A DNA stretch of 64,000 nt. It comes from Hemiscyllium ocellatum. Lineage: Eukaryota. The stretch's first letter is position 1. Every line of letters starts with the position of its first letter. The stretch is taken from NCBI RefSeq assembly GCF_020745735.1, contig NC_083409.1:16988619-17052618 (forward strand), written 5' to 3'. A program made the position numbers and the translations under genes. The notes beneath the pieces are model-generated. The model saw only the letters and a program-made list of their open reading frames with translations, did not search any database and had not been told where the DNA came from. This document shows positions 7,868 to 64,000 of this stretch, piece by piece.

Positions 7868-8196
7868 CTACACACATTCTGATCTCCTGATGCTCTTGCT
7901 GAGGGGAGAGGGGAGGGTCACATGGGTGAGGGCACAGGAGAAGCGAGCATTGGACTCCCAGTCAGACCCAGAGAGGGTCAGCAGGCTGCTGACACTGTAG
8001 GTGCTGTCCGAAGCTCGCAGGTAGTTGCTGGTCTGAACCCCGTCCGAAATGACTGCACCGTCCTTCTTCCACTGCACCTCCAGCTCATCGGGATAGAAGT
8101 GATTGGCAAGGCACACCAGGGTGGCAGTGCCCTTGGCATTGACCTGCTCCGGGGAGGGGGGCAGCAGGGTCAGCTTGGGCTGAGAGTTCTCACGGC
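7868..8196 (-). CDS. IGKC: Ig kappa-type light-chain constant exon, cluster 1 (intact)
   Basis: Acceptor tttctcttgtctttcag, phase 1. Translates (S)RENSQPKLTLLPPSPEQVNAKGTATLVCLANHFYPDELEVQWKKDG...FSCALTHVTLPSPLSKSIRRSECV-stop; C1-set Cys/Trp/Cys plus the C-terminal interchain Cys; resembles nurse shark NS4 C. Confidence 0.97.

Positions 8197-19639: not shown

Positions 19640-19641
<2 letters not shown>

Positions 19642-19674
<33 letters not shown>
19642..19674. repeat. (CTG)11 microsatellite abutting an isolated RSS heptamer; paralog (CAG)6 at 53772-53789
   Basis: cactgtg(ctg)11 at 19635-19674; (cag)6cacagtg at 53772-53796. Confidence 0.95.
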
Positions 19675-20047
19675 AGGTCAGTGAGATCAGAGACTGGGAC
19701 AGGGAGCCAGAGCTCACATCAAACTCTGCCCCGTGTCCGTCACACTGAGACTGGCAGGAGGCTACTCACTGATTTCACTCCATGCTGCAGGAATGGGACC
19801 ACAGGCTGCAAATGGACAGAGCTCCTCCACACGGTGAGTAAAACTGACTGACTTATATCTTGCTTCTTAAAGGGGGCAATGGAACTGAAGTGGTACGGTT
19901 GGACAACTGTTAGACACAGTGCTCCTTAATCAACCATTTCGTTCACTGCAGCTCCCCACTAACACCTTCAACAAATCAGTAACTGTATTTTAGAAAGTGT
20001 GTTTCAGTATTGAAAGGGTTAATAACAGAGGATTGAGGTTTACTTAC

Positions 20048-20082
20048 TCAGTCTGAGCTTGGTTCCTTTACCGAACGTGTCC
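20048..20082 (-). CDS. IGKJ: Ig kappa-type J segment, cluster 1
   Basis: G GAC ACG TTC GGT AAA GGA ACC AAG CTC AGA CTG A|gtaagt = [11 protein letters not shown]; FGxG motif and canonical donor. Confidence 0.97.
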
Positions 20083-20121
20083 CACAGTGAGAGTTCCCAG
20101 TGCAGAGGCTGTACAAAAACC
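20083..20121 (+). promoter_or_regulatory. J recombination signal sequence, 23-bp spacer
   Basis: CACAGTG (20083-20089) + 23 nt + ACAAAAACC (20113-20121): consensus heptamer and nonamer. Confidence 0.98.
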
Positions 20122-20553
20122 TCTGCTCTCTGCTTCCCCCCCATCACTCTCAACATCTCCCTGTCTCACAGTCTCTCATTCACTCTCAACTTCTTTCTGC
20201 CCCTCTCTGTCTCTCCCTCATTCATGTGTCTTTCTGTCTCCATCTCTCTCTGTGTCCAGCTGGGCTTGGGAGCTTTGTGAAATTTATTTTTCGATATTAA
20301 ATCTTGCAGCTGTTCTTCACGCGTGGTCATGGAGTATCAGAGGGAAACTTGAGGCCTTCAGTGAGCGGTGGACACCACAGGGACTGGAGTGTGTCATGGA
20401 CAGTGACAATCCCAGCATGGGGTAATTTGTTCAGTTTCATTTGTATCTAATTGTGGATGTGTCAGTTCAGGCTGTGGGACTGTGTGTCCATTATTATACA
20501 TTTTATATAACTGATTGATGTGTCAGTGCATGAGGTGGTGCTGTGTGTCTTGA

Positions 20554-20581
20554 GGTTTTTGTATGGCTCTGTATCACTGTG
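20554..20581 (-). promoter_or_regulatory. V recombination signal sequence, 12-bp spacer
   Basis: Minus strand CACAGTG + atacagagccat + ACAAAAACC. V12/J23 is the kappa configuration; deletional joining would excise 499 bp (20083-20581). Confidence 0.98.
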
Positions 20582-20886
20582 TTGAGTGGAGCTGCTATAC
20601 AGGTTGTTCTGACAATAATAGTCAGCGACATCCTCATTCTGAACGTTGCTGATTGTCAGGGTGTAACTGGTCCCTGATCCACTGCCGGTGAATCGGTCAG
20701 AGACTCCTGTGTATCGAGATGTTGCAGCATAGATCAGGAGAGAGGGTTTCTGACCTTCTCGCTGCTGGTACCAACTGAGGTAGCTGCTAATGTCTTGACT
20801 GGCCGTACAGGTGATGGTTGCAGTCTGGCCCAGTTCCACTGACAGCACCGGGGGAGACTGGGTCATGATAATCTCCCCATTGATAC
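20582..20886 (-). CDS. IGKV: Ig kappa-type V exon, cluster 1 (open, unrearranged)
   Basis: (G)[101 protein letters not shown]; V-set Cys/Trp/Cys; acceptor ctgacccctcag. Confidence 0.98.
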
Positions 20887-21072
20887 CTGAGGGGTCAGAG
20901 AGAAACACAGTGAAGTCAGAACTGTCACAGAAAGAGCCTGTCAAATGAGAGATTGTTGGAGACACTGAGCATTCCTCTGGTTTCAGCATTTTCCCTTCAA
21001 TCACAAGTCAGTGGAATTGGAGTGAAATGGAGAGCAGCTAAAGATTCAAGGTGGAAGGAGAGAGATTTGTAC

Positions 21073-21121
21073 CTGCGACACAGAATGCCAGGGGCCAGAT
21101 CAGCTGGATGTGTGAAATCAT
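21073..21121 (-). CDS. IGKV: Leader exon, cluster 1
   Basis: ATG ATT TCA CAC...GTC GCA G|gtac = MISHIQLIWPLAFCVA(G); 186-nt phase-1 intron to V. Confidence 0.93.
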
Positions 21122-50715: not shown

Positions 50716-52658
50716 AACACATGGTGGGTATGTAGTCAGTTCCTTTCTGTTGTAACTGTGTGATGCTCCAGCGCTCATCCCAGTCAAAAAGCCTGATTCA
50801 GAGACTGATCATGGAAGGGGAAGGAAAGGGAAAAGGATTGGAATATGTTGTGGATGGACAGGCTGGGTCACTGGGTCAGAAATTGTCCTGTCCCTCCAGC
50901 TCACACTGATGGCCTGAGGATCTCCTCTCTCTCTGCTGGGCCTTCATGGAATGAGGTTTGTGTCCAAACCAGTCCCCAGTGAGAATGGGCCAACAGAACA
51001 GAACTCCCCTTCATTTGACAAGAATCTGTCCATCGTCCTGAATGAGGTCAATCCCTGGTCAATGTGAGAAATGGGGAGTTACTCCAGGAAAAGACATGCT
51101 TTTGGGTCAAGGGTTAACATCCATTAGTGGGGCAGAGCAGAGGGAGATTTATCCTGAATTCAACTTTCACCACCTGGGACACTGTGAGAAAGACAGAGAA
51201 GCAAGACAAAGAGAGAGGTAGAGGCAAATTGTGTGTGTGATCGAGTGATTGAGGGAGGGGCATCTGAGACAGTGTGTGATATGTGAAGGGGCCAAGAGAG
51301 AGGTAGAGGGAGGTAGACGTGGTGTGATTGAGGGATAGAGAGAGAGAGAAACAAGATGTGACTGATCAGGATGGATAGAGAAAAGAGTGATACCAAGAGT
51401 GAAGAGAATCAATAGAGAATGGGTAGGGTTGAGTGTGAGAGAGAGAGAGAGACATGAGTATGGTAAGAGACAGAATGACAGAGAAGGAGGGAGAGAGACT
51501 GTAGATTGGAGTGCAGAGAGGGAGGGAGAGACAGAGAGAAGAATAGAGAGGGGCAATTAACATTTGGAGGTTTTCAATTGAAGCGAGCAATGGAGCGAGT
51601 GATGGTGAAAGAGAAAGATGCAGAAATAGAGATTATGAGACGGAGTGAGGAAGTGTAAGTTGGAGAGAGTGGCTTTGAGACAGAGTGAGAGAGAAAGAGA
51701 GAGAGAGACAGAGACAGAGGGACAAGTCCTGGTCACCACATTCTTGGAAGGACGTGATTGTACTTGAGAGGGTGCAGAGATTTACCAGGATGCTGCCTGG
51801 GATGGAGGGTCAGCTGTGGAGAAAGATTGGAATGGTTGGGGTTGTTTTCCATGCAGCAGTGAAGGCTGAGAGGGGACCTGATAGAGGGGGATAAGATTAT
51901 TCAGGGCAGTGATAGGGGGAGTAGGAAGGCACTTTTTACAAGAGTCAAGGACTCAATAACCAGGGACAGAGATTGAAGGAAAAATAGACATGGACACAAA
52001 GAAAGTGCTGCAGGAGTAGGCCATTCGGCCCTTTGAGACTGTTCTGTCATTCAGTATGATCATGGCTGATCCTCTCTCTTGAAGTCATCTTCCTACTTTC
52101 CCCCCATTCCCTTCATGCTGTTAAAATGCAAAACAAATATCTCTCTCTTTCTCTTGAATATATTCAGTTCCTTGTCCTCCATAGCCTTCAGTGGAAGATA
52201 ATTCCACAGATTAACCATCCTCTGAGTGAAGAAATGTTTCCTCATCTCAGTCTGAAATGGTCTACCCCATATCCCCCTGAGACTGTCTCCCGGTTCCAGA
52301 CTCCCCAACCAGGGGAAACCTCCTCCCTGCCCAGCCCTGTTAGAATATGATACATTTCAATCAGATCCCCTCTTATCCTTCTGAGTCCAGGCCCAATCGA
52401 GTTGGAGAGTGAGAGAAGAGTTAGGGAGAAATGTTTTCATCCAGAGGGTGGTGGGAGTCTGGAACTCACTGCCTGAAAGGCTGGTTGAGTCACAAACTCT
52501 CAGGACATTGGAGCAGTGTTTAGATATTCCCTTGTGTTGCTGTAGCCCCAGGGTAATGGGCCAAGAGCTGGAGGATCATCAGATCTTTGTTTACCAGCAC
52601 AGACACAATGGGCCAAATGGCCTCATTCAGTGCTGTCCACATCAATGATTCTCTGAGA

Positions 52659-52690
<32 letters not shown>

Positions 52691-52700
52691 GAGAGAGAGA

Positions 52701-52798
52701 AGAGGAAGTGTGAGGGGCTGACGTGGCTCTCTCTGCCTGATGCCATTTACACACTGAGGAACACCCAGTCAGACTCTCACAGGCTGCAGCTTTATAAA
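52701..52798 (+). promoter_or_regulatory. V-kappa promoter, cluster 2
   Basis: AGAGGAAGTG (52701-52710), TGACGTGG (52719-52726), octamer further degraded to ATTTACAC (52745-52752), TATAAA (52793-52798). Confidence 0.7.
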
Positions 52799-52858
52799 GC
52801 AGAGCCCAGTGAAGGGAGAGTTTATCAGGAACCAGGCACAGGGACAGGAGCACACACC

Positions 52859-52907
52859 ATGATTTCACACATCCAGCTGATCTGGCCCCTGGCATTCTGT
52901 GTCGCAG
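52859..52907 (+). CDS. IGKV: Leader exon, cluster 2 (identical to cluster 1 leader)
   Basis: MISHIQLIWPLAFCVA(G)|gt. Confidence 0.9.
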
Positions 52908-53093
52908 GTACAAATCTCTCTCCTTCCACCTTGAATCTTTAGTTGCTCTCCATTTCACTCCAGTTCCACTGACTTGTGATTGAAGGGAAAATGCTGAAAC
53001 CAGAGGAATGCTCAGTGTCTCCAACAATCTCTCATTTGACAGGCTCTTTCTGTGAAAGTTCTGACTTCACTGTGTTTCTCTCTGATCCCTCAG

Positions 53094-53412
53094 GTATCGG
53101 TGAGGACATCATCATGACCTAGTCTCCCCCGGTGCTGTCAGTGGGACTGGGCCAGACTGCAACCATCACCTGTAGGGCCATTAGCAGCTACCTTGCTTGG
53201 TACCACTAGCGAGAAGGTCAGAAACCCTCTCTCCTGATCTATGCTGCAGCAACTCAACTCACAGGAATCTCCGAGTGATTCACCGGCAGTGGATCAGGGA
53301 CCAGTTTCACCCTGACAATCAGCAACGTTCATAATGAGGATGTCGCTGACTGTTACTGTCAGCAGCATTACAGCTGGCCTTACTTTCGGTAAAGGAACCA
53401 AGCTCAGACTGA
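53094..53412 (+). pseudogene. IGKV: Pre-joined (germline-joined) kappa VJ pseudogene
   Basis: V runs directly into TTCGGTAAAGGAACC with no RSS. Stops TAG 53120, TAG 53207, TGA 53276; 9-nt CDR1 deletion; junction CCT-TACT-TTC is out of frame; donor GT changed to GG at 53413-53414. Confidence 0.95.
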
Positions 53413-56400
53413 GGAAGTAAACCTCAATCCTCTGTTATTAACCCTTTCAATCTCTAAACACAATTTATAAAACACAAATACTGAATTGTTGAAGTGTTGC
53501 AGTGAAGGAAATGTTTGATTGAGGAACACCGCGTCCCATACGGTGTACATCTGTATTTCGTTAGTCCTATAACCCCATTAAACAGCAAGATATAAGTCAG
53601 TAAGTTTTACTCATCGTGTGGAGGAGCTCTGTCCATTTGCAGCCTGTGGTCCCATTCCTGCAACATGGAGTGAATTCAATGAGTAGCCTCCTGCCAGTCT
53701 CAGTGTGACGGACACGGGCAGAGTTTATGTGAGTTCTGGTTCCCTGTCCCAGTCTCTGATCTCACTGACCTCAGCAGCAGCAGCAGCAGCAGCACAGTGA
53801 GACACCGAGCTCCCACCTCCCCCAGCTTTAACTCTGCTCAATCACATAATCACAGAATTGTTACAGTGCACAAGGAGGCCATTCTGCCCATCCTATCTGG
53901 ACTGGCTCTCCGAATGAGCAATTCACTGAGTGTCATTCTCCTGCCTTCTCCCTGTCACCCTGAACATTGTTCCTTTTCAAATAACAGTCTCATTCCCTTT
54001 GGAATGTTTTAATTGAAGCTGCCTCCACCACACTCTCAGGCAGTGCATTCCACACCTTAACCACTCACTGGCCAAAATGTTGTTCCCCATCTCACTTTTG
54101 TGACTTTTCCCAATTGCCTTCAATCTGTGGTCTCTCGGTCTCAATCCTTTCTCTTGGGAACATTTTCTCCCTATTTACTGTATCCAGGCCCCTCCTGATT
54201 TTAATTCCTCCAACAAATCTCCTCTCAGCCTTCTCCAAAGAAGTCAGTCCCAAATTGTCCAAACTATCTTAATAACTGATGTTCCTCATCCCTGGAATGA
54301 TCTTTGGGAATATTTTTGCCATTTCTACAAAATTTCACCTGCTTCCTGAATGATTTACATTATCTATGTCCCTCATGATTTTATAAACCTCTATAAGGTC
54401 ACTCCTCAGACTCTTACACTAGAGGGAAAAAAGTCTCAGCTTTTCCAGTCCCTCATAGTCATGGAGTCATACAGTGTGGAAACAGACATTTCAGTCCAAC
54501 TTGCCTGTGTTAACCAGATATCCTAAATGACCTCATCCCATTTGCCAGCATTTGGCTTACATCCCTCTAAACCCTTCCTATCCATGTTCCCATCCCAACG
54601 TTTTTTAAATGTTGTAATTTTATCCGCCTCCAACGCTTTCTCTAGCAGCTCGATCCAGACACACACCACCCACTGCGTGACAGGTTACCACTCAGGTCCC
54701 TTTTGAATCTTTTGCCTCTCACCTTAAACCTATGCCCTCTTGTTTTGGACTCCCGTTCCCAAGGAAAAGACCTTGGATATACACCTTGTCCATGCCCTTC
54801 ATGATTTTCTGCACATCCATAAGGTCACCTCGAGGCCTTAGATGCTGCAGGGAAAATAGGCCCATTTCTTCAGCCTCTCCCGACAGCGGAAACTCTCCAA
54901 TTCCTGGCCACATCCTTGTAAATCTTTTCCGCTGCCTTTTAAGTTTAACAACATCCTTCCTATCTCAGGATGATCAGAATTGTTCACATTATTCCCAAAG
55001 TGGCGTCACCAACTGCTGTACCACTGCAACATCATGTCCCAACTCCTTTACTCAATGCAGTGACCAATAAAAGTAAGCATACCCAACACCTTCTTCATCT
55101 CCCTGTCTACCTGTGACTCCACTGTCAAGGAATAATGCACCTGCACCTGCACCTTCACCACTCAGTCTCTTTGTTCAGCAACACTCCGCAGGGCCCTACC
55201 ATTAACCATAAAAGTCCTGCCTTGGTTTGGCTTTGAAAAGTACAGAACTCACATTTATCTGAATTAAACTCCATCTGCCATTCCTCAGCCCACTGGCCCA
55301 GTTGGTCAAGATCCCATTGTACTCTTAGACAGCCTTCTTCACTGGCCACGATGCCACCTGAAAATTCACCTGAACAGACTCTCACAACTCTGGCCCCTCC
55401 CTGCCTGTTACACTGCTACTACCCCAGTCTATATTCAAAAATTAAAGAACCATTTATAATGACTCTATCATGTTTGCAGATATCTGTAAATTCCTTGCAT
55501 TTGTATTCCTCTGCATCTTTCCCATTGGGTGGTGATTTGTTGACTGTTCTGAGGATTCTGTGGTCCTTGGTGTTCCTCTCTGTTATTCCCTCCTGGCTCC
55601 CACAGCCCTGCCAAGTTAGTTTAAACCCTCACCAACTGCACTAATAAATCACCCCAAAGGAACTCAGTCCCAGCTCGGTTCAGGAACAACGCTGTCTGGT
55701 CTGTCCAGGTCCCATCTCCCCCAGACCCAGTCTCAAGGTCCCAAGAATCTAAAGTCCTCCAACTTGGATCGTCTTTCCAGCTTCACATTCACCTGTGTTA
55801 TCCTCCTGTTCCTATTCTCACTTGGGTGGGGCACTGGGAGAAATCCGGAGATTCTAACTTTTGAGATCCCAGTGCTAATTCCCTCCAGAGCCCCCTAAAT
55901 TCTGACTGCAGGACCACATCCCTTTTCTCCCTCTGTCACAGGGACCATTGTGGACCACGACTGCTGCCTCTTCCCCCTCTCCCCTCAGGGTGGTTTGCAG
56001 CCGCTCAGAGACATCCTTGACCCTGGCACCAGGGAGACAACACACCATCCTGGATTCCCATCTGCAACTGCAGAAACACCTATCGATTGCCCTCACTCTC
56101 GAATCTCCTCTCGCTCTCCCTCTTCCTTGTACCCCCTGTACAGCTGAGCCCCCCGTGGTGCCATGGGCTTGGCTCTGGCTGCACTCCCCAGATGAACCAT
56201 CATTCTCATCAGGATTCTGAACTGAATCCTGGTTGGAGAGTGCGATGCACTCAGGGGATTCCTCTACTAGCTGCCTGGTCCTTTTAGACTGTCTGCTGCT
56301 CCCCCATTCCCTCTCACCCTGCATTCGCTGAAGCTGAAGAGTGACCACATCTAGAAACGTGCTCTCCATGGAGCTCTCAGCCTCACGGACGCTCCGAACT

Positions 56401-59400
56401 GACACCAGCTGCTGCTCAAGCTCCGAAACCCGGAGTTCCAACTGCTGTCACTGACCACACTTTCTGTTCTCATGGTATTCCAGGAGCTAGGAAGCATTCT
56501 GAAGTTCCCACCTAAATGCACACTCTCTTCACCCTTTGGTTGTCTCTTGGCAAAGTTCTGATGACAAACAGCTCCAGCAGGGCTCACAGTCCAGTGGGTT
56601 AAGTGTTCCAGGGTTTTGGGGAAACTCTCCAGAAGACTTTAAGAAATAGGAGCAGAAATCAGCCATTCAGCCCGTTGAATCTGCTCTGCCAGTTGATCTT
56701 GGCAGATATGCTTCTCACCCCCATTCTCTGCTTGATCCACAGGAACGTTCGATCCCCTTAACTATCACAAACTATCTACCTCTGTCTTAAATACACTCAG
56801 TGACTTGGCCTCCACTGCCCTCTGTTAGCAATACATTCCACAGATTCACCACCCTCTGGCTGAAGAAATTCCTCCTCATCTCAGCTCGAAAGGGCCAGCC
56901 CTTCATACTGAGGGTGTGCCTTGGTTACCGACTCTCTCCTGTTTTTGGAAACATCTTTTTCACATCCACTCTATCCAGGTTGATCAGTATTCAGTAAATT
57001 TCAAAAAGATCCCTCCTCATCTTTCTAAAGTCCATTGAGTACAGACCCAGAGTCCTCAAGCACATCTGATACGATAAGTCCTTCATCACCAAGATCATTG
57101 TTGTAAACCCCTCCAATGCCAGCACATTGTTTCTTAGAATATGGGTCCGAAATCTGCTCACAATATTCCAAATGCAGTCTGACCAGAGCCTTACACAGCC
57201 TCAGCAGTACATCTCTGCTCTTGTATTCTGGCCCTACTGAAATGAATGCTATCATTTCATTTGCCTTCCCAAGCACAAACTGGACCTGCCTGTTAACCTG
57301 AAGGGAAACCTGAATGAGGTTCGTGCTTTAGATTTCCAAAAGATTTTCTTATTTAGAAAATAGTCTTTGCATCTCTTCTTCCTCCCAAAGTGCACACCTT
57401 CACACTGTAACACATTGTATTCTATCTGCCACTTCTTTGTCCACTCTCCCAGCCTATCCAGGAGCTTTTACATTCTTCCCACTTCCTCAACACTACCTGT
57501 CCCTCCACCTATCTCATGTCATCTGCAAACTTAGCAACAATGTCTTCACTTCCTCCATCCAGATTGTTAATGTATAACGTGAATAGTTATGGTCCCAACA
57601 TTGACCCCTACATGACTCTACCAGTCACCAACGGCCATTTTTCCTCACTCTCTGCTTTATGCCAACCTGCCAGTCCTTAGTCCATGCCAGTGCCTCGGCC
57701 CTCACACTGTATGCTCTTATCTAATGTCAAAGGCCTTCTAGAAATCCAAATACATTACTTCCTTTGACTCTCCTTTGTCTGACTGGCTGATTGCCTCCTC
57801 AAAGAATTCTAACAGATTTGCCAGGCATGACCTCCCCTTGATGAAGCCGTGTTGACTCAGCCCTAGTTTACAATTGCACCTCCAAATCCTCTGCAATTTC
57901 ATCCTTAAATTGAAGTCTAAAACCTTACCAACAACTGAGTCTAGGCTAACTGGCCTATAATTTCCCATCTTCTCCCTCCTCCCTCCCTTCTTAAACAGGG
58001 CTGTTATGTGAGCCACTTTCCAGTCCCTTGCCCCCATCAGATCCCTGCCCACCACACTGTCATACCCTGACTCCATCGATTCCTGAAAGATCATCTCCAA
58101 TACCTCCATAATTTACTCAGTGATCTCCTTCAGAACACACTCATGTCGTTCATCTAGTCTGGGTGAGTTACCCACATTCAACCTTTCAGCTTCGATTCAA
58201 TTCCTCTGCTATTTCTTCACTTCCTATAATACTTTCTCCAGCCTCATTTTCCAATGTCTATTTTTGCCTTCCTCTTCCTTTTTATACATCTGATAAAACT
58301 CGTGCAATCTTCTTTTGTATTACCGGCTAACTTACCCCCACATTTCCCCTTCTCCACCTTTAATGCTTTTTTATTTATCCTCTCCAGGTTTTTAAAGGCT
58401 TCCTAACCCTCTGGCTTCCCACTTTTCTCTACCACATTGTGCATTTTTTTCTTTTGCTTTTATGCTGTCCGTGACTTCCCTCACCAGCCATGGTTGCCTT
58501 GTCCTCCCCTTAGTATGTTTCTTCTTTTTTGGGATGAATTCTGACTCTGCTTCCTGAATTACCCCCAGAAACCCTGCTGTTTGCTGCCCCACTATTTTAC
58601 CTGCTCGGCTCCCCTTCCAATCAACTCTGGCCAGCTGCTTCCTCATGTCTTTGTACTTACCTTTACTCAACTGAAATACAGATCCATCTGATTGCAGCTT
58701 TTCCCTCTCAAACTACAGGGGGAATTCTATCATATTATGGTCATTTATCCAGAAGGATACTTTCACCTTCAGCTCATTAATCAAGTTTGCCTCATTCCAC
58801 ATCACTGAATCCAGAACTGCCTGTTCCATAATGGCTCAACCACAAGCTGCTCCAAAAACCATCTTGTAGACATCCATGAAATCCTTTTCTTGAGACGCGC
58901 TACCCAGTCCACCTATCCATTGAGGTCTGCCCTGACATTTTGTATATGGCTTGTCTGTCTCCTGACTGATTTCCTTCCCCACACCCTGATTACTGCTTGG
59001 AGATCTGGACATAACTTGCATCAGATTCTTTATTTCTTGCGGTTCCTCAACTCTACCCACACACATTCTACACCTTTTGACTCTATATCACTTCTTGCTT
59101 TGATTTAATTTAATTTCGTACTAACAAGGCAACTCTTCCCCCTCTGTCCATCTGCCTGTTCTTTTGATAGGACATGTATCCTTGGATATTTAGTTCCCAG
59201 CCCGGATCCCCTTGCAGCCATGTCTCTGTGATACCCACAACATCATACCTGCCAGTTTCAATCTGCACTACCAGTTCATTGCTTATACTGTGTGCTTTTA
59301 AGTCCAACAGCTTCAGTCCTGCATTGACTGCCTTCTTTCTCATCATTATCCTCTTATCTGCTGTGCTTGATGCTCGACTCTTGATCCTTTTTGTACTCTC

Positions 59401-62400
59401 TGTCCTCGTATGCCTTCTAGAAACCGAATAGCCTTTCCTGAGCCCTCCTCCACTTTAACTAGTTTAAATTCCTTGGAAACTCAATTTACCTCGATTTATG
59501 GCATCACTTTGTCTGCCTTACTCAGAATGATTCGTGCATTTAGATACAAACCCTTTAAGTTTGTTCTATTGTTCGTTTTCCCTGCACTTTTATGGTTCCT
59601 TTAAAATTCAAAAATTCTATCCCTTCCTTTTATTTTCTGGTAACAATCAATCCAATCACTAACCAGCAATCCTACCTTCTCCTTTACCTTCCATTTTCTC
59701 ATTTTCCATCCAACTGAACCAAATTCCTTTCTCTTTGGGTTGAGTTCAGGACAATATTTATCCTTGGACCAATATCATGAAAAATGCTCTTTGACTTCAT
59801 TGCTTCTAGTGGGATCTTGCTGTGTAGAAATTGGCTGCCCCTTTCCTGACATTGCAACAGTGACTTGTTTTAAAACAAAATGTAAATGTCTTTGGGAGAG
59901 CCTGAGGTGTTAGGGGCTCGATTGAAATACAATTACAGTTATGGAGATGTACAGCATGGAAACAGACCCTTCAGTCCAAGTCATCCATCCTGACCAGATA
60001 CCCTAAATTAATCTAGTCCCATTTGCCAGCATGAGGCCCATTTTGCTCTCAACCCTTCCTATACATATATCCATCCAGATGGCTTTTTAAATATTGTAAT
60101 CATACCAGCCTCCATCACTCCCTCTGGCAGCTCATTCCAAACATTTACCACCCTCTGCATGGAAACCTTAGGTCCCTTTTAAATCTTTCCCCTGTCACCT
60201 TCAACCTATGCCCTCTAGTTCTGGACTCACCCACTCTGAAGAAAAGATCTACTCTATTCACCGTATCTATACCCCTCATGATTTTATAAACCACTGTGTG
60301 GTCACCCTCAGCCTCCAACAATCCAGGGAAAATAGTCTCAGTCTATTCAGCTTCCTCCGATAGCTCAAACTCTCCAACCTTGGCAACACCCTTCTAAAAC
60401 TTTTCTGAAGCATTTTAAGGTTCACAATATTTTTCCTACAGCAGGGAGACCAGAAATACACACCGTATTCCAAAAGTGACCTAACCAATGTCTGGCACAA
60501 CCACAAAAGCTCCCAACTCCAATACTCAATGCACTGCCCAGTAAAGGAAACCATACTAAATTACTTCGTCACCCCCCTCCCTCCCCACCCACACGCACAC
60601 ACATCTACCTACAACTCCATTTTCAAGAAACCTTTTTTTTGGTTGAACTGGGAGTCTTTCAGATGTGAAAGGTGCCATTCCATGGCACTGTTGGATGAAG
60701 AGCAGGCAGTTCCTTCTGGTGTACCTGGTTAATATTTATCCCCCAATAAAAATCACTAAAAATCTATTTCTCTGCTAATTATCATACTGTGTTTGGGATC
60801 TCACTGTGCAAAGTCTGCTGGAAAGAGCCTTTGGGACATTCTGAGTTGGGGACAGGTGCTACACAAATGCAGGTCTTTCTTTAAGGTTAGAGTCCCCTGA
60901 TCCTGAACCTCACCCATTGTCTGCGCACTCTCACCTTCCAGGAGGCCTGGAGTCATTAGGAGCAGTGACCCTGCCTGACCCCAGGTCACTGAGACTCTAT
61001 GCAGCTTCACCCTTGATCTCAGCCCAGTGGTGTGCAGCAAGGTTTGAAATATAATCTAGAACCTTCTACACAGACACCCCAATGTGACTCCTTCCTGAAG
61101 TGTGTGGATCCGAGTCTGCTCCAATGTTCTCGGATAAAGTTCTCCTCATCTGTGGTTAATCGAAGGTTTGTTAAAGAGGGATCGAGCTCCATCCCACTCT
61201 CCAGCTCTTGCTCCAAAGCTCTGGATGTTTCGACGTTCCAAGTGAATATCCAAGTGTTTTTTTCAATGTGATGAGGGTTTCTGCCTCTCCCACCCTTTCA
61301 GACAGTGAGTCCCAGGTCCCATCAGGCTCTGGGTGAAAACAATTACTCCTCAATTCACCTCGAACCCTGTCCCCAATTCATTTCAATCTCTCCCCATGGT
61401 TATTGCCCTCTCTGCTGATGGAAATCAGTCCTTCCTACCAATTCTATCTCGGCCCTCATCATTTTACACGCCTTGATCAAATCTCCCCTCAGCCTTCTCT
61501 GTTCCAAAGAAAACAGTCCCAGACAAACCAATCATTCCTCAAAACTAAAACTTCCCATTCTTGACAAAATCCTCCACTGTCCCCATCACTCAGGGGATCA
61601 TATCCTTCCTGTAATGTGGTGACCAGAACTGTACCCTGTTCTCTCACTGTGCTCTAACTGGGGTTTTATACAGTTCCAGAATAAACAAATTTCTTACTTT
61701 CACTCTCAACCAAAAATGAGATAAGGGAGGTGATGGCCTAATAGTATTATTGCTGAACTGTTAATCCAGAGATCCAGATTAATGTTCTAGGGACCAGGGC
61801 AGAATCCTGCCACAGCAGATGGTGGAATTTGAATTCAATTAAAAAATCTGGAATTAAGAGAGTAATGATGACCATGAAACCATCGTTGATTGTCAGGGAA
61901 AAGCATCTGATTCACTAATGTCCTTTAGGGAAGGAAACTGCCATCCTTCCCATGTGACTCCAGACCCACAGCAATGTGGGTGACTCTAAAATGCCCTCTG
62001 GGCGATTAGGGATGGGCAATAAATGCTGCCGATCCAGCAATGCCCTCATTCCATCAAGGGAAAAAGAAAAACTGTTTATCCCATGTGTTTTCTGAAGCAC
62101 CTCACTGACCTGCATTCATTAATCACCATGGCCACATCGTCCACCTGCACACACATCTGACTTCCAGCCTCAAGCTGACGAGAGACATTCCTTCATTATC
62201 TGAGAAACAGACAGAAACATAAAACACAGGACCAGTAGTAGGCCATTCGGCCCCTCAAGCCTGCTCCACCATTCAATATGATCATGGCCGATCATCCAAC
62301 ACTGTCCCCTGTTCCTGCTTGCTCCCCACATTCTTTGAACTCATTAATCTTAAGAACTGTATCGAATTCCTTCTTGAACACATACTGCATCTAATTCCCT

Positions 62401-63377
62401 CATGCTGGCAAATTGATGAGAAGTATTGAGTTGTTTTTTGACACAATGATCCGTTGGGCCTTTTGGGTCTCCCTGACTCTGACCCTATTCTTATATATTA
62501 TGAATAACTGGGTACCAAGGACTGATCCCTGTGGTACCCCAACTGGTAAATATCTGCCATTCAAAAAAAGACTCACTCTTCCTGTCCTGTCTGCCAACCA
62601 GTTCTTAATCCATGTCAGGACATGATCCCAAATCCTCTTGTTTGTTGGGATTTCTTTGATTCAGTTGGACATAGTTAATCCTGTCTTTGCCTTCCTCAGG
62701 TCCTGTTCAATGTCACCCCCGCATTTTCGATCCTCCTCTGGACTTTCTGCAGGTTTGATCTCCAGATAACCAACATCACCTTCCCTGTTTAGTCTTCCCT
62801 ACTCTGGCTGCCTTTTGACATCCCAGGCTGAGAGTCTAGATTTGGGAGTCCCACCCTTACTCATTGTGGGAACAGATTCTGAACAATCTCTGTCTTTTCT
62901 TTTGAGGGATCCCACTGCCCTGACACTGATTTCACATCATGGCGTTGGTTCCAGTCCACTTTTACTAAATCATCGCACAGTTTAGTAAAATAGTTCATTC
63001 CCAAGTGAAAACGTTAACACTTGCTGCGTGGTTCTCCATTTCCATCTCAACTCTCAATCTCACTGAGTTCTGGTCACTGTCACTAAACTGCTCCCCCATT
63101 GAGAACCCTTCCAGCTGCCCACATTCATTCCCTAAACAAGGGTCCAAACCTGTTCCTTGTCTTTCCCCATCACCTTCTCGGGGCAATTAGGGATGAGAAA
63201 TAAATGCTGGCCCTGCTCGTGACACTCACTCCCAAGAAACAATTTAAACAATACCTGGTTTTTTGTCGGGTTTGGTCGGTATTGGATACAAATGTTCAAA
63301 CATTTTACCAGTGAATGTTCTGAGAGTTGAAGTTTCTTCAATTGGCAGGGATTAAAATTGTTTCTCTTGTCTTTCAG

Positions 63378-63706
63378 GCCGTGAGAACTCTCAGCCCAAG
63401 CTGACCCTGCTGCCCCCCTCCCTGGAGCAGGTCAATGCCAAGGGCACTGCCACCCTGGTGTGCCTTGCCAATCACTTCTATCCCGATGAGCTGGAGGTGC
63501 AGTGGAAGAAGGACGGTGCAGTCATTTCGGACGGGGTTCAGACCAGCAACTACCTGCGAGCTTCGGACAGCACCTACAGTGTCAGCAGCCTGCTGACCCT
63601 CTCTGGGTCTGACTGGGAGTCCGACGCTCGCTTCTCCTGTGCCCTCACCCACGTGACCCTCCCCTCTCCCCTCAGCAAGAGCATCAGGAGATCAGAATGT
63701 GTGTAG
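63378..63706 (+). CDS. IGKC: Ig kappa-type constant exon, cluster 2 (open ORF but orphaned)
   Basis: Intact acceptor and reading frame; 4 nt differences from C1 (P>L, N>D, plus silent changes). Confidence 0.93.
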
Positions 63707-64000
63707 AGTGTTTGAGACAGTCCACAGAGGAGACCCAACTTTAAACAGAACAGGGCTGAGCTGGCAGGACAAAGGTCATTGTCAGCACTGAATGTCAACG
63801 CTCCTCCTTCTCAGGACTGGTCTAGGGAACACTTCTGAGGTTCAGGAGTTCAGGCAGTTCATTGGGACAGCGTAGAGAGAGTTTTATCCTATGTAAAACC
63901 TCATGCTGTCCTTGTTCTGGGAGTGTTTGACGGGTCAGGGTTGACTTGTGATGCTAAGTAAAATCTCTTGAAGATGTTGAAAAGTGCCAGCTGTACAAAA

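What the first reader, a model, noticed from the sequence alone, without database searches (positions are those of the whole stretch)
53094..53414. Germline-joined, out-of-frame VJ fossil beside a rearrangeable twin
Seen: V2 is fused to J with both RSSs and the ~500-bp spacer gone, while the leader intron and J-C intron remain, so it is not a retrocopy. The junction TGG CCT|TACT TTC has no evident N additions and is out of frame. Later-looking damage includes three C>T stops, a CDR1 deletion and the GT>GG donor. Its CDR3 is unrelated to V1, so it arose from a different V. Known: germline-joined Ig genes in cartilaginous fishes are attributed to RAG activity in germ cells. Inference: a non-productive germline RAG event was fixed, showing that such joins need not be selected for function.
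Basis: partly seen in the sequence, partly recalled or inferred. Interest (0 to 1): 0.75.

Follow-up and report, generated by a model that had tools for sequence, protein, structure and literature searches.

The report
Dead pre-joined shark kappa antibody gene
This is a dead shark antibody light-chain (kappa) gene whose V and J pieces are already fused, one base out of frame, in the assembled genome; the description is accurate, but fused genes of this kind, dead ones included, were described in nurse shark in 2000.

Summary
At 53094-53414 a kappa (NS4/type III) V exon runs straight into J. Both recombination signals and the 499-bp spacer of the neighbouring split cluster are missing. The 186-bp leader intron, the 10-kb J-C intron and an intact C exon are kept. 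The J frame is +1 to the V frame. There are three in-frame stops, a 9-bp CDR1 deletion and a GT>GG change at the J splice donor.

Split relatives in bamboo shark show coding ends that give this junction by trimming alone, with no added bases. That fits a RAG-type join made without TdT.

The V exon carries private changes at the same rate as its own distal intron (4.9% vs 4.6%), so it looks like an old, unconstrained pseudogene. I found no hypermutation signature.

Three points stay open:
- Germline status is untested.
- The frameshift may be original or a later 2-nt loss.
- Cluster 1 is not the progenitor.

Lee et al. 2000 described six germline-joined nurse-shark NS4 genes. Two were pseudogenes, one with stops and a one-base CDR3 frameshift. 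The scan has already flagged at least six other joined kappa genes elsewhere in this genome. This is a new member of a known kind, of low interest.

The parts
52745..52799 (+). Promoter of cluster 2. It has an octamer-like motif (52745-52752, ATTTACAC where all relatives have ATTTACAT) and a TATA-like box (52791-52799).
   Evidence: Position 52752 T>C is the only private change in 132 otherwise invariant upstream sites. Lee et al. place the octamer upstream of a PstI site, which is present here.
52859..52907 (+). Leader exon 1 of cluster 2, identical to cluster 1.
52908..53093 (+). Leader intron, 186 bp, retained, with its GT and AG splice sites intact.
   Evidence: It has the same length as the nurse-shark NS4 leader intron. 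Two private changes in 165 sites.
53094..53381 (+). V part of the fused exon. It carries stops at 53120, 53207 and 53276, a 9-bp CDR1 deletion at 53180/53181 and a Tyr>Cys change before the conserved Cys (53352).
53375..53389 (+). V-J coding joint TGGCCT-T-ACTTTCGG. No RSS, no spacer and no N bases are required. J is in the +1 frame.
   Evidence: The germline ends in relatives are ...TGGCCTTGG|heptamer for V, and heptamer|GGACACGTTCGG or heptamer|GCTTACGTTCGG for J.
53382..53412 (+). J segment ([10 protein letters not shown] in its own frame). It has one difference from the family consensus (ACG>ACT).
53413..53414 (+). Former J splice donor, GT mutated to GG.
53415..63377 (+). J-C intron, about 10 kb, retained and full of repeat insertions. 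The first 300 bp carry excess private changes and a 12-bp deletion.
63378..63706 (+). C exon of cluster 2. It is intact and differs at 4 nt from C1.
20582..21121 (-). Cluster 1 leader exon, leader intron and intact V1 exon (split neighbour).
20083..20581 (-). Cluster 1 V-J intervening sequence, 499 bp, bounded by a canonical 12-RSS (V side) and a canonical 23-RSS (J side). This whole segment is absent from cluster 2.
20048..20082 (-). Cluster 1 J segment, with an intact GTAAGT donor.
7868..8196 (-). C exon of cluster 1.

Best explanation
Cluster 2 is a germline-joined kappa (NS4/type III) light-chain pseudogene.

Proposed sequence of events:
1. In a germ-line cell, RAG-type recombination cut a split V-12RSS ... 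23RSS-J cluster at both heptamer borders.
2. The roughly 500-bp intervening DNA was lost.
3. The coding ends were ligated after trimming about 2 nt from V and 2-4 nt from J. No TdT additions were made.
4. The joint has a 25-nt CDR3, which puts J one base out of frame. Most probably the gene could never make a light chain.
5. The V exon, the J segment and the first ~300 bp of the J-C intron have since drifted without constraint. This produced three stops, a lost splice donor and small deletions.
6. The promoter-leader block, an intronic block and the C exon stayed close to those of live clusters. I infer gene conversion within the multi-copy kappa array as the cause.

Shown: the anatomy, the family assignment, the trimming-only reconstruction and the drift pattern. 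Inferred: RAG as the agent, germ-line timing, dead on arrival, and gene conversion.

The confidence of 0.68 is for the whole chain. On its own, 'germline-joined kappa pseudogene' is about 0.9.
For: - Anatomy.
- In-situ position inside a complete cluster, collinear with cluster 1 over about 20 kb.
- Only two V, two J and two C segments exist in the window.
- Family: V-set and C1-set domains. C2 is 91% identical to the nurse-shark NS4 C region.
- Both deletion end points lie within a few nt of where the heptamers sit in eight split relatives, and the joint needs no untemplated base.
- Private changes at sites invariant in relatives: V exon 9/183, the same as cluster 2's own distal intron at 39/847 (p=0.85). 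J to +300 bp is 31/277, against 8/254 and 9/255 in split clusters (p<0.001). Promoter, leader exon and leader intron together are 3/345.
- No AID hotspot enrichment (5/13 against 35/110 eligible sites) and no excess of tandem changes.
- An independent assembly of the sister genus holds an in-frame joined kappa gene (L001/P0028).
- Precedent: Lee et al. 2000 found that about 10% of nurse-shark NS4 genes are germline-joined, with little N. Two of six are pseudogenes, and R19 has stops and a 1-nt CDR3 frameshift.
Against:
- The reference assembly's PacBio reads came from spleen of a pre-hatchling.
- No orthologue could be retrieved, so neither the age of the join nor its original frame is fixed.
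- Bamboo-shark models P0079 and P0038 run V to J in frame with the same CDR3 core.
- The comparison set is 8 of roughly 200 clusters per genome. Some changes counted as private could be shared with unsampled paralogues.
- Gene conversion is inferred only from mosaic identity.
Confidence: 0.68

Rival explanations
1. The gene is germline-joined but was in frame, and possibly functional, at birth. For example the original joint could have been TGG YCT NTT ACN TTC. A later 2-nt deletion in the CT-rich joint shifted the frame, and the other lesions followed.
For: Bamboo-shark RefSeq models P0079 (CQQHYSWS-ITFGKG) and P0038 (CMQHYSWS-LTFGSG) read V to J in frame. P0038 is V2's best protein match at 78%. 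The J type heptamer|GCTTACG exists in both genera. The locus has suffered other small deletions of 9 bp and 12 bp.
Against: This reading needs one extra event. The shared CDR3 core is encoded by germline V and J segments, which also occur in split genes, so it does not show a shared joint. The junctional residue itself differs between the genes. The V tree does not resolve orthology. Unselected joins are out of frame two times in three.
Confidence: 0.2
2. The join is somatic. In this reading the germline locus is a split pseudogene, and the assembly captured a B-cell V-J deletion because the long reads came from spleen.
For: The PacBio DNA came from pre-hatchling spleen. In the same assembly, RefSeq P0019 (joined, out of frame) has a V domain identical to P0035, a split gene on an unplaced scaffold.
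Against: A single cluster out of roughly 200 would be rearranged in only a tiny, polyclonal fraction of cells. The consensus of about 25x reads per haplotype would therefore stay split. The junction has no N bases, whereas somatic shark kappa joints usually have them. There is no hypermutation signature. The proportion of joined genes in this genome fits the roughly 10% seen in nurse-shark erythrocyte DNA.
Confidence: 0.06
3. A chance deletion without RAG, by replication slippage or microhomology-mediated end joining, removed the spacer.
For: With the GCTTACG type of J there is up to 3 nt (CTT) of possible microhomology at the joint.
Against: Both end points fall within about 4 nt of the two heptamer borders. 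For a random ~500-bp deletion in a ~1.2-kb region I estimate the chance of this at roughly 10^-4 to 10^-5. Several other joined kappa genes exist with the same geometry.
Confidence: 0.03

Closest known systems
Nurse-shark NS4 germline-joined pseudogenes R19 and R6 (Lee, Fitch, Flajnik & Hsu 2000, J Exp Med 191:1637; PMC2193156)
   Same: Same light-chain family, with the C region 91% identical. Same cluster layout, 186-bp leader intron and ~500-bp spacer lost. The joint has little or no N. R19 has stop codons and a one-base frameshift in CDR3.
   Different: Different species and locus. This copy additionally has a dead J splice donor and a CDR1 deletion. Here the whole cluster, with an intact C exon 10 kb away, is visible. 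Germline origin was shown there with erythrocyte DNA and several animals; it was not tested here.
In-frame germline-joined NS4 genes R4, R7, R18 and RE18 of nurse shark, and the bamboo-shark joined kappa gene L001/P0028
   Same: V fused to J at the RSS borders inside an otherwise normal cluster. Both introns are retained.
   Different: Those genes are in frame and potentially functional, and R4 and R18 are expressed in pups. This one is out of frame and carries stops.
Partly or fully joined IgH clusters (VD-J, VDJ) of horned shark, and fully joined type I and type II light-chain genes of skates and sharks
   Same: Antigen-receptor segments pre-joined in the germline of cartilaginous fish, attributed to RAG acting in germ cells.
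   Different: Different isotypes. In several of those families every member is joined and expressed. Here the joined gene is a minority form within a mostly split family.

Membership tests
Germline-joined NS4/type III (kappa) light-chain genes of sharks | Belongs to the NS4/kappa cluster family (leader, V, J and one C1-set exon). | tested here: met
   V-set and C1-set domains. C2 is 91% identical to nurse-shark NS4 C. The nearest proteins are named kappa light chain-like in Hemiscyllium and Chiloscyllium.
Germline-joined NS4/type III (kappa) light-chain genes of sharks | V and J are contiguous in genomic DNA, both RSSs and the ~500-bp intervening sequence are absent, and the leader intron and J-C intron are kept. 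| tested here: met
Germline-joined NS4/type III (kappa) light-chain genes of sharks | The joint lies at the heptamer borders and is explained by trimming or P bases with little or no N region. | tested here: met
   Coding ends of split relatives L002-L007 and cluster 1 reproduce the joint by trimming alone.
Germline-joined NS4/type III (kappa) light-chain genes of sharks | The joined form is present in non-lymphoid DNA and in more than one individual. | not testable with these tools
Chromosome-level assemblies returned no DNA. The assembly's long reads are from spleen.
Germline-joined NS4/type III (kappa) light-chain genes of sharks | Same promoter and octamer region as the split genes. | tested here: met
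   1 private change in 132 upstream sites, located in the octamer-like motif.
Processed or semi-processed retrocopy | Introns are lost, or homology ends at the transcript boundaries, with a poly(A) tail and target-site duplications. | tested here: not met
   Both introns are present. Homology with cluster 1 continues more than 6 kb upstream of the promoter and past the C exon.
Somatically rearranged and hypermutated B-cell allele | N additions at the joint, with changes enriched at WRC/GYW hotspots and in tandem runs. | tested here: not met
   No N is needed. Hotspot share is 5/13 against 35/110 eligible sites. Adjacent pairs are 5 against 3.0 expected, P=0.17.
Primordial never-split V gene | A continuous in-frame V-J, placed basal to the split genes. 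| tested here: not met
   It is out of frame. V2 sits inside an unresolved group of split and joined genes, not at the base.

The most novel reading that the evidence does not exclude
This locus may be one of a population of independent germline V-J joins in the roughly 200-cluster kappa array of the epaulette shark, most of them out of frame. If a full census gives about one in-frame join in three, and phylogeny shows many separate events, germline RAG joining would be frequent and essentially unselected. The array would then give a first genome-wide measure of RAG activity in a vertebrate germ line.
Probability: 0.3. Interest if true: 0.5.

Novelty: new member of a known kind. Interest (0 to 1): 0.2.

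Why it matters
Joined antibody genes in sharks are the main natural evidence that the V(D)J recombinase can act in germ cells. A joined gene that was useless from the start shows that such events can persist by drift alone. That point was already made with nurse-shark clones in 2000, so this locus adds only one more well-resolved example. It does show the whole cluster, including the intact C exon 10 kb away. The practical value lies elsewhere. The assembly comes with the parents' blood reads and nine offspring, so germline transmission of every joined kappa gene could be checked directly and counted genome-wide.

Tried and rejected
- DNA of other epaulette-shark kappa genes (P0019) and of the bamboo-shark in-frame models (P0038): both returned 'no DNA, file too large'.
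- L008, reached through a cluster mate of P0038, was a false lead. The shared part was only the C exon, and the V-J region lies in an assembly gap, which I left alone.
- L007 looked like a possible orthologue because its upstream 6 kb matches cluster 2 better than cluster 1 does (80-85% vs ~75%). But it is split, it is itself a pseudogene, and it is no closer than other paralogues in the intron (~89%). I did not accept it as the orthologue.
- Hypermutation footprint: the excess of changes from the V exon to +300 bp after J resembled one. However, hotspot use, tandem changes and transition bias were all at background, so I rejected it.
- The V-domain tree left V2 in an unresolved polytomy.
- The findings look-up by sequence was blank, which means nothing.
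- Absolute dating was dropped. The pedigree mutation rate (7e-10 per generation) would put a 5% divergence at an absurd age.
- The Hara et al. 2018 genome paper was not held in the library.

Full report
**What is in the window.** A self-comparison shows two light-chain clusters lying head to head as arms of an old inverted duplication. The arms are 7619-27868 and 63956-43959. They are about 85% identical downstream of J and about 75% identical upstream of the promoters. The window holds exactly two V, two J and two C segments. The V translation hits Pfam V-set and both C exons hit C1-set. C2 is 91% identical to the nurse-shark NS4 constant region. The nearest full-length proteins are 'immunoglobulin kappa light chain-like' of Hemiscyllium ocellatum and Chiloscyllium punctatum. 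An earlier scan note names this genome as epaulette shark.

**Cluster 1 (minus strand) looks functional and is split.**
- The V exon is open.
- It is followed by a canonical heptamer, a 12-bp spacer and a nonamer.
- 499 bp separate V (ends at 20582) from J (starts at 20082). The J side has a canonical nonamer, a 23-bp spacer and a heptamer.
- J has a GTAAGT donor, and C1 is intact.

**Cluster 2 (plus strand) is the finding.**
- The promoter, leader exon and 186-bp leader intron are nearly identical to cluster 1.
- The V exon starts at 53094 and runs directly into J at 53381/53382. The 499-bp segment with both RSSs is absent.
- The J-C intron (about 10 kb) and an intact C exon (63378-63706) follow.
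- There are 25 nt between the Cys and Phe codons, so J is read one base out of frame. The V frame stops at TAA 53390.
- Three earlier stops are present: 53120, 53207 and 53276.
- There is a 9-bp in-frame CDR1 deletion flanked by a CA repeat, and GG replaces the GT donor at 53413-53414.
- Homology with cluster 1 continues far upstream of the transcription start and past the C exon, and both introns are retained. No kind of retrocopy fits.

**How the joint was made.** I fetched eight kappa loci from an older bamboo-shark assembly, the sister genus in the same family. Six are split: L002, L003, L005, L006, and the pseudogenes L004 and L007. L001 is joined in frame. In L008 the V-J region lies in an assembly gap.
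- The split V genes of the class that ends '...SWP' carry the coding end ...AGCTGGCCTTGG followed by the heptamer.
- The J segments begin, after the heptamer, with either GGACACGTTCGG or GCTTACGTTCGG.
- The observed joint ...AGCTGGCCTT-ACTTTCGG is obtained by removing 2 nt from V and 2-4 nt from J. It needs no untemplated base and has one later substitution (ACG>ACT).
- Both end points of the missing segment therefore sit within a few bases of the two heptamer borders. This is the signature of RAG cleavage and is very unlikely for a random deletion.
- The absence of an N region matches what Lee et al. found for germline-joined NS4 genes, in contrast with somatic joints.

**Relation to V1.**
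- V1 ends in a longer CDR3 class ([10 protein letters not shown]). This class is conserved in bamboo shark (P0001, P0037), and V1 pairs with P0037 in a V-domain tree.
- V2 belongs to the SWP class. In the first 1.3 kb of the J-C intron, cluster 1 is no closer to cluster 2 (89.5%) than bamboo-shark paralogues are (88.6-88.7%).
- 'Twin' therefore overstates the relation.

**How long has it been dead?** I counted changes private to one sequence at sites where the others agree. For cluster 2:

| Region | Private changes | Rate |
|---|---|---|
| Promoter, leader exon and leader intron | 3/345 | 0.9% |
| V exon | 9/183 | 4.9% |
| J to +300 bp | 31/277 | 11% |
| +300 to +1300 bp | 39/847 | 4.6% |

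- The rate at +300 to +1300 bp is the same as in cluster 1 and L007.
- In the J to +300 bp segment, the two split clusters show only 8/254 and 9/255.
- The V-exon rate equals the distal-intron rate (p=0.85). The promoter-leader block is significantly lower (p=0.0008). The J-proximal segment is higher than in split clusters (p<0.001).
- My reading is that the V exon, J and the proximal intron have drifted without constraint for about as long as this cluster's intron has been diverging.
- The promoter-leader block, a conserved intronic block (about 53585-53720) and the C exon plus 3'UTR stay close to the family consensus. The C exon has 4 differences in 329 nt while its flanks are only about 85% identical.
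- The same conserved blocks are seen in dead split clusters L004 and L007. Homogenisation by gene conversion is the likely cause, but this is inferred.

**Hypermutation test.** The excess from V to +300 bp resembles a hypermutation domain, so I tested for one.
- Changes at G/C fall in WRC/GYW hotspots no more often than eligible sites do (5/13 vs 35/110).
- Adjacent changes are not in excess (5 against 3.0 expected).
- Transitions are about half of the changes.
- There is no AID-type signature.

**Germline or somatic?** This is the weak point.
- The genome paper states that the PacBio DNA came from 25 mg of spleen from a pre-hatchling, assembled by trio binning.
- A polyclonal B-cell population cannot outvote the germline form at one of roughly 200 clusters.
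- The joint lacks N bases.
- About 10% joined NS4 genes is what erythrocyte DNA of nurse shark shows.
- I therefore give the somatic reading about 6%, but it has not been excluded.
- The parents' blood reads and nine offspring data sets exist and would settle it.

**Dead on arrival?**
- A direct join of known coding ends gives exactly the observed 25-nt CDR3. Two in three unselected joins are out of frame.
- Against it, bamboo-shark RefSeq models P0079 and P0038 read V to J in frame with the same CDR3 core, and P0038 is V2's best protein match at 78%.
- That core is encoded by germline V and J segments that also occur in split genes, and the junctional residue differs. This is therefore only a lead.
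- The DNA of those genes could not be fetched.
- I put a secondary 2-nt loss at about 20%.
- The order of the join relative to the stops and the donor mutation is unknown. The cluster might already have been dead when it was joined.

**What is known.**
- Lee et al. 2000 cloned six germline-joined NS4 genes from nurse-shark erythrocyte DNA. Four were in frame.
- Two (R6, R19) were pseudogenes. R19 had stops and needed one nucleotide removed from CDR3 to restore the frame.
- They inferred at least five independent RAG-like joining events with little TdT activity. A 2016 review repeats this.
- I found no paper on joined kappa genes in Hemiscylliidae.
- The scan itself has already followed up several other joined kappa genes in this same genome, most of them out of frame, and reached the same verdict.

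**Verdict.** This is an accurate observation and a mostly sound interpretation, with two untested steps: germline status and the original frame. It is a new member of a known kind. Interest 0.2.

Noticed in passing
window 52700-53093 and 21280-20887; L002-L007: The promoter, leader exon and 186-bp leader intron are 97-99% identical across all sampled kappa clusters of two genera, dead clusters included. Their J-C introns differ by about 10% or more. This points to concerted evolution or to an unrecognised constraint on the leader intron.
   Followed up: partly
window 53585-53720 (and about 19880-19745 on the minus strand): A block 200-330 bp downstream of J is nearly invariant in every cluster of both species. 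It could be a conserved intronic regulatory element.
   Followed up: no
window 63340-63810 vs 8240-7760: The C exon plus about 130 bp of 3'UTR are 98.8% identical between the two clusters (4 differences in the 329-nt exon, 2 of them amino-acid changing). The flanking sequence drops to about 85%. This is fewer synonymous differences than neutral divergence predicts.
   Followed up: partly
L002:11226-11275 and L002 V exon: A split bamboo-shark cluster carries the same GT>GG change at the J splice donor, together with a Cys23>Tyr change in its V. Dead split clusters with this donor lesion therefore exist, and the lesion is recurrent or shared.
   Followed up: no
proteins P0019 (XP_060686024.1) and P0035, Hemiscyllium ocellatum: P0019 reads V into J out of frame (WP-LRSVKEP). 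Its V domain is identical to that of P0035, a split gene on an unplaced 72-kb scaffold. This could be a very recent join, a joined/split polymorphism, or two forms of one locus in a spleen-derived assembly.
   Followed up: partly
L001:9842-14428 (Chiloscyllium punctatum BEZZ01000502.1): An in-frame germline-joined kappa gene (P0028, 237 aa) with its own C exon. It sits on a long branch, at about 79% identity to other clusters even in the promoter and leader.
   Followed up: partly
L004:about 610-690: The V exon of this split bamboo-shark cluster is interrupted in CDR1 by an insertion of about 57 bp that ends in GAT repeats.
   Followed up: no
window 52655-52700 and 21330-21290; 53775-53800 and 19640-19675: A (GA)n microsatellite lies directly upstream of both promoters. 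A (CAG)n run lies at the same place in both J-C introns, with different lengths.
   Followed up: no
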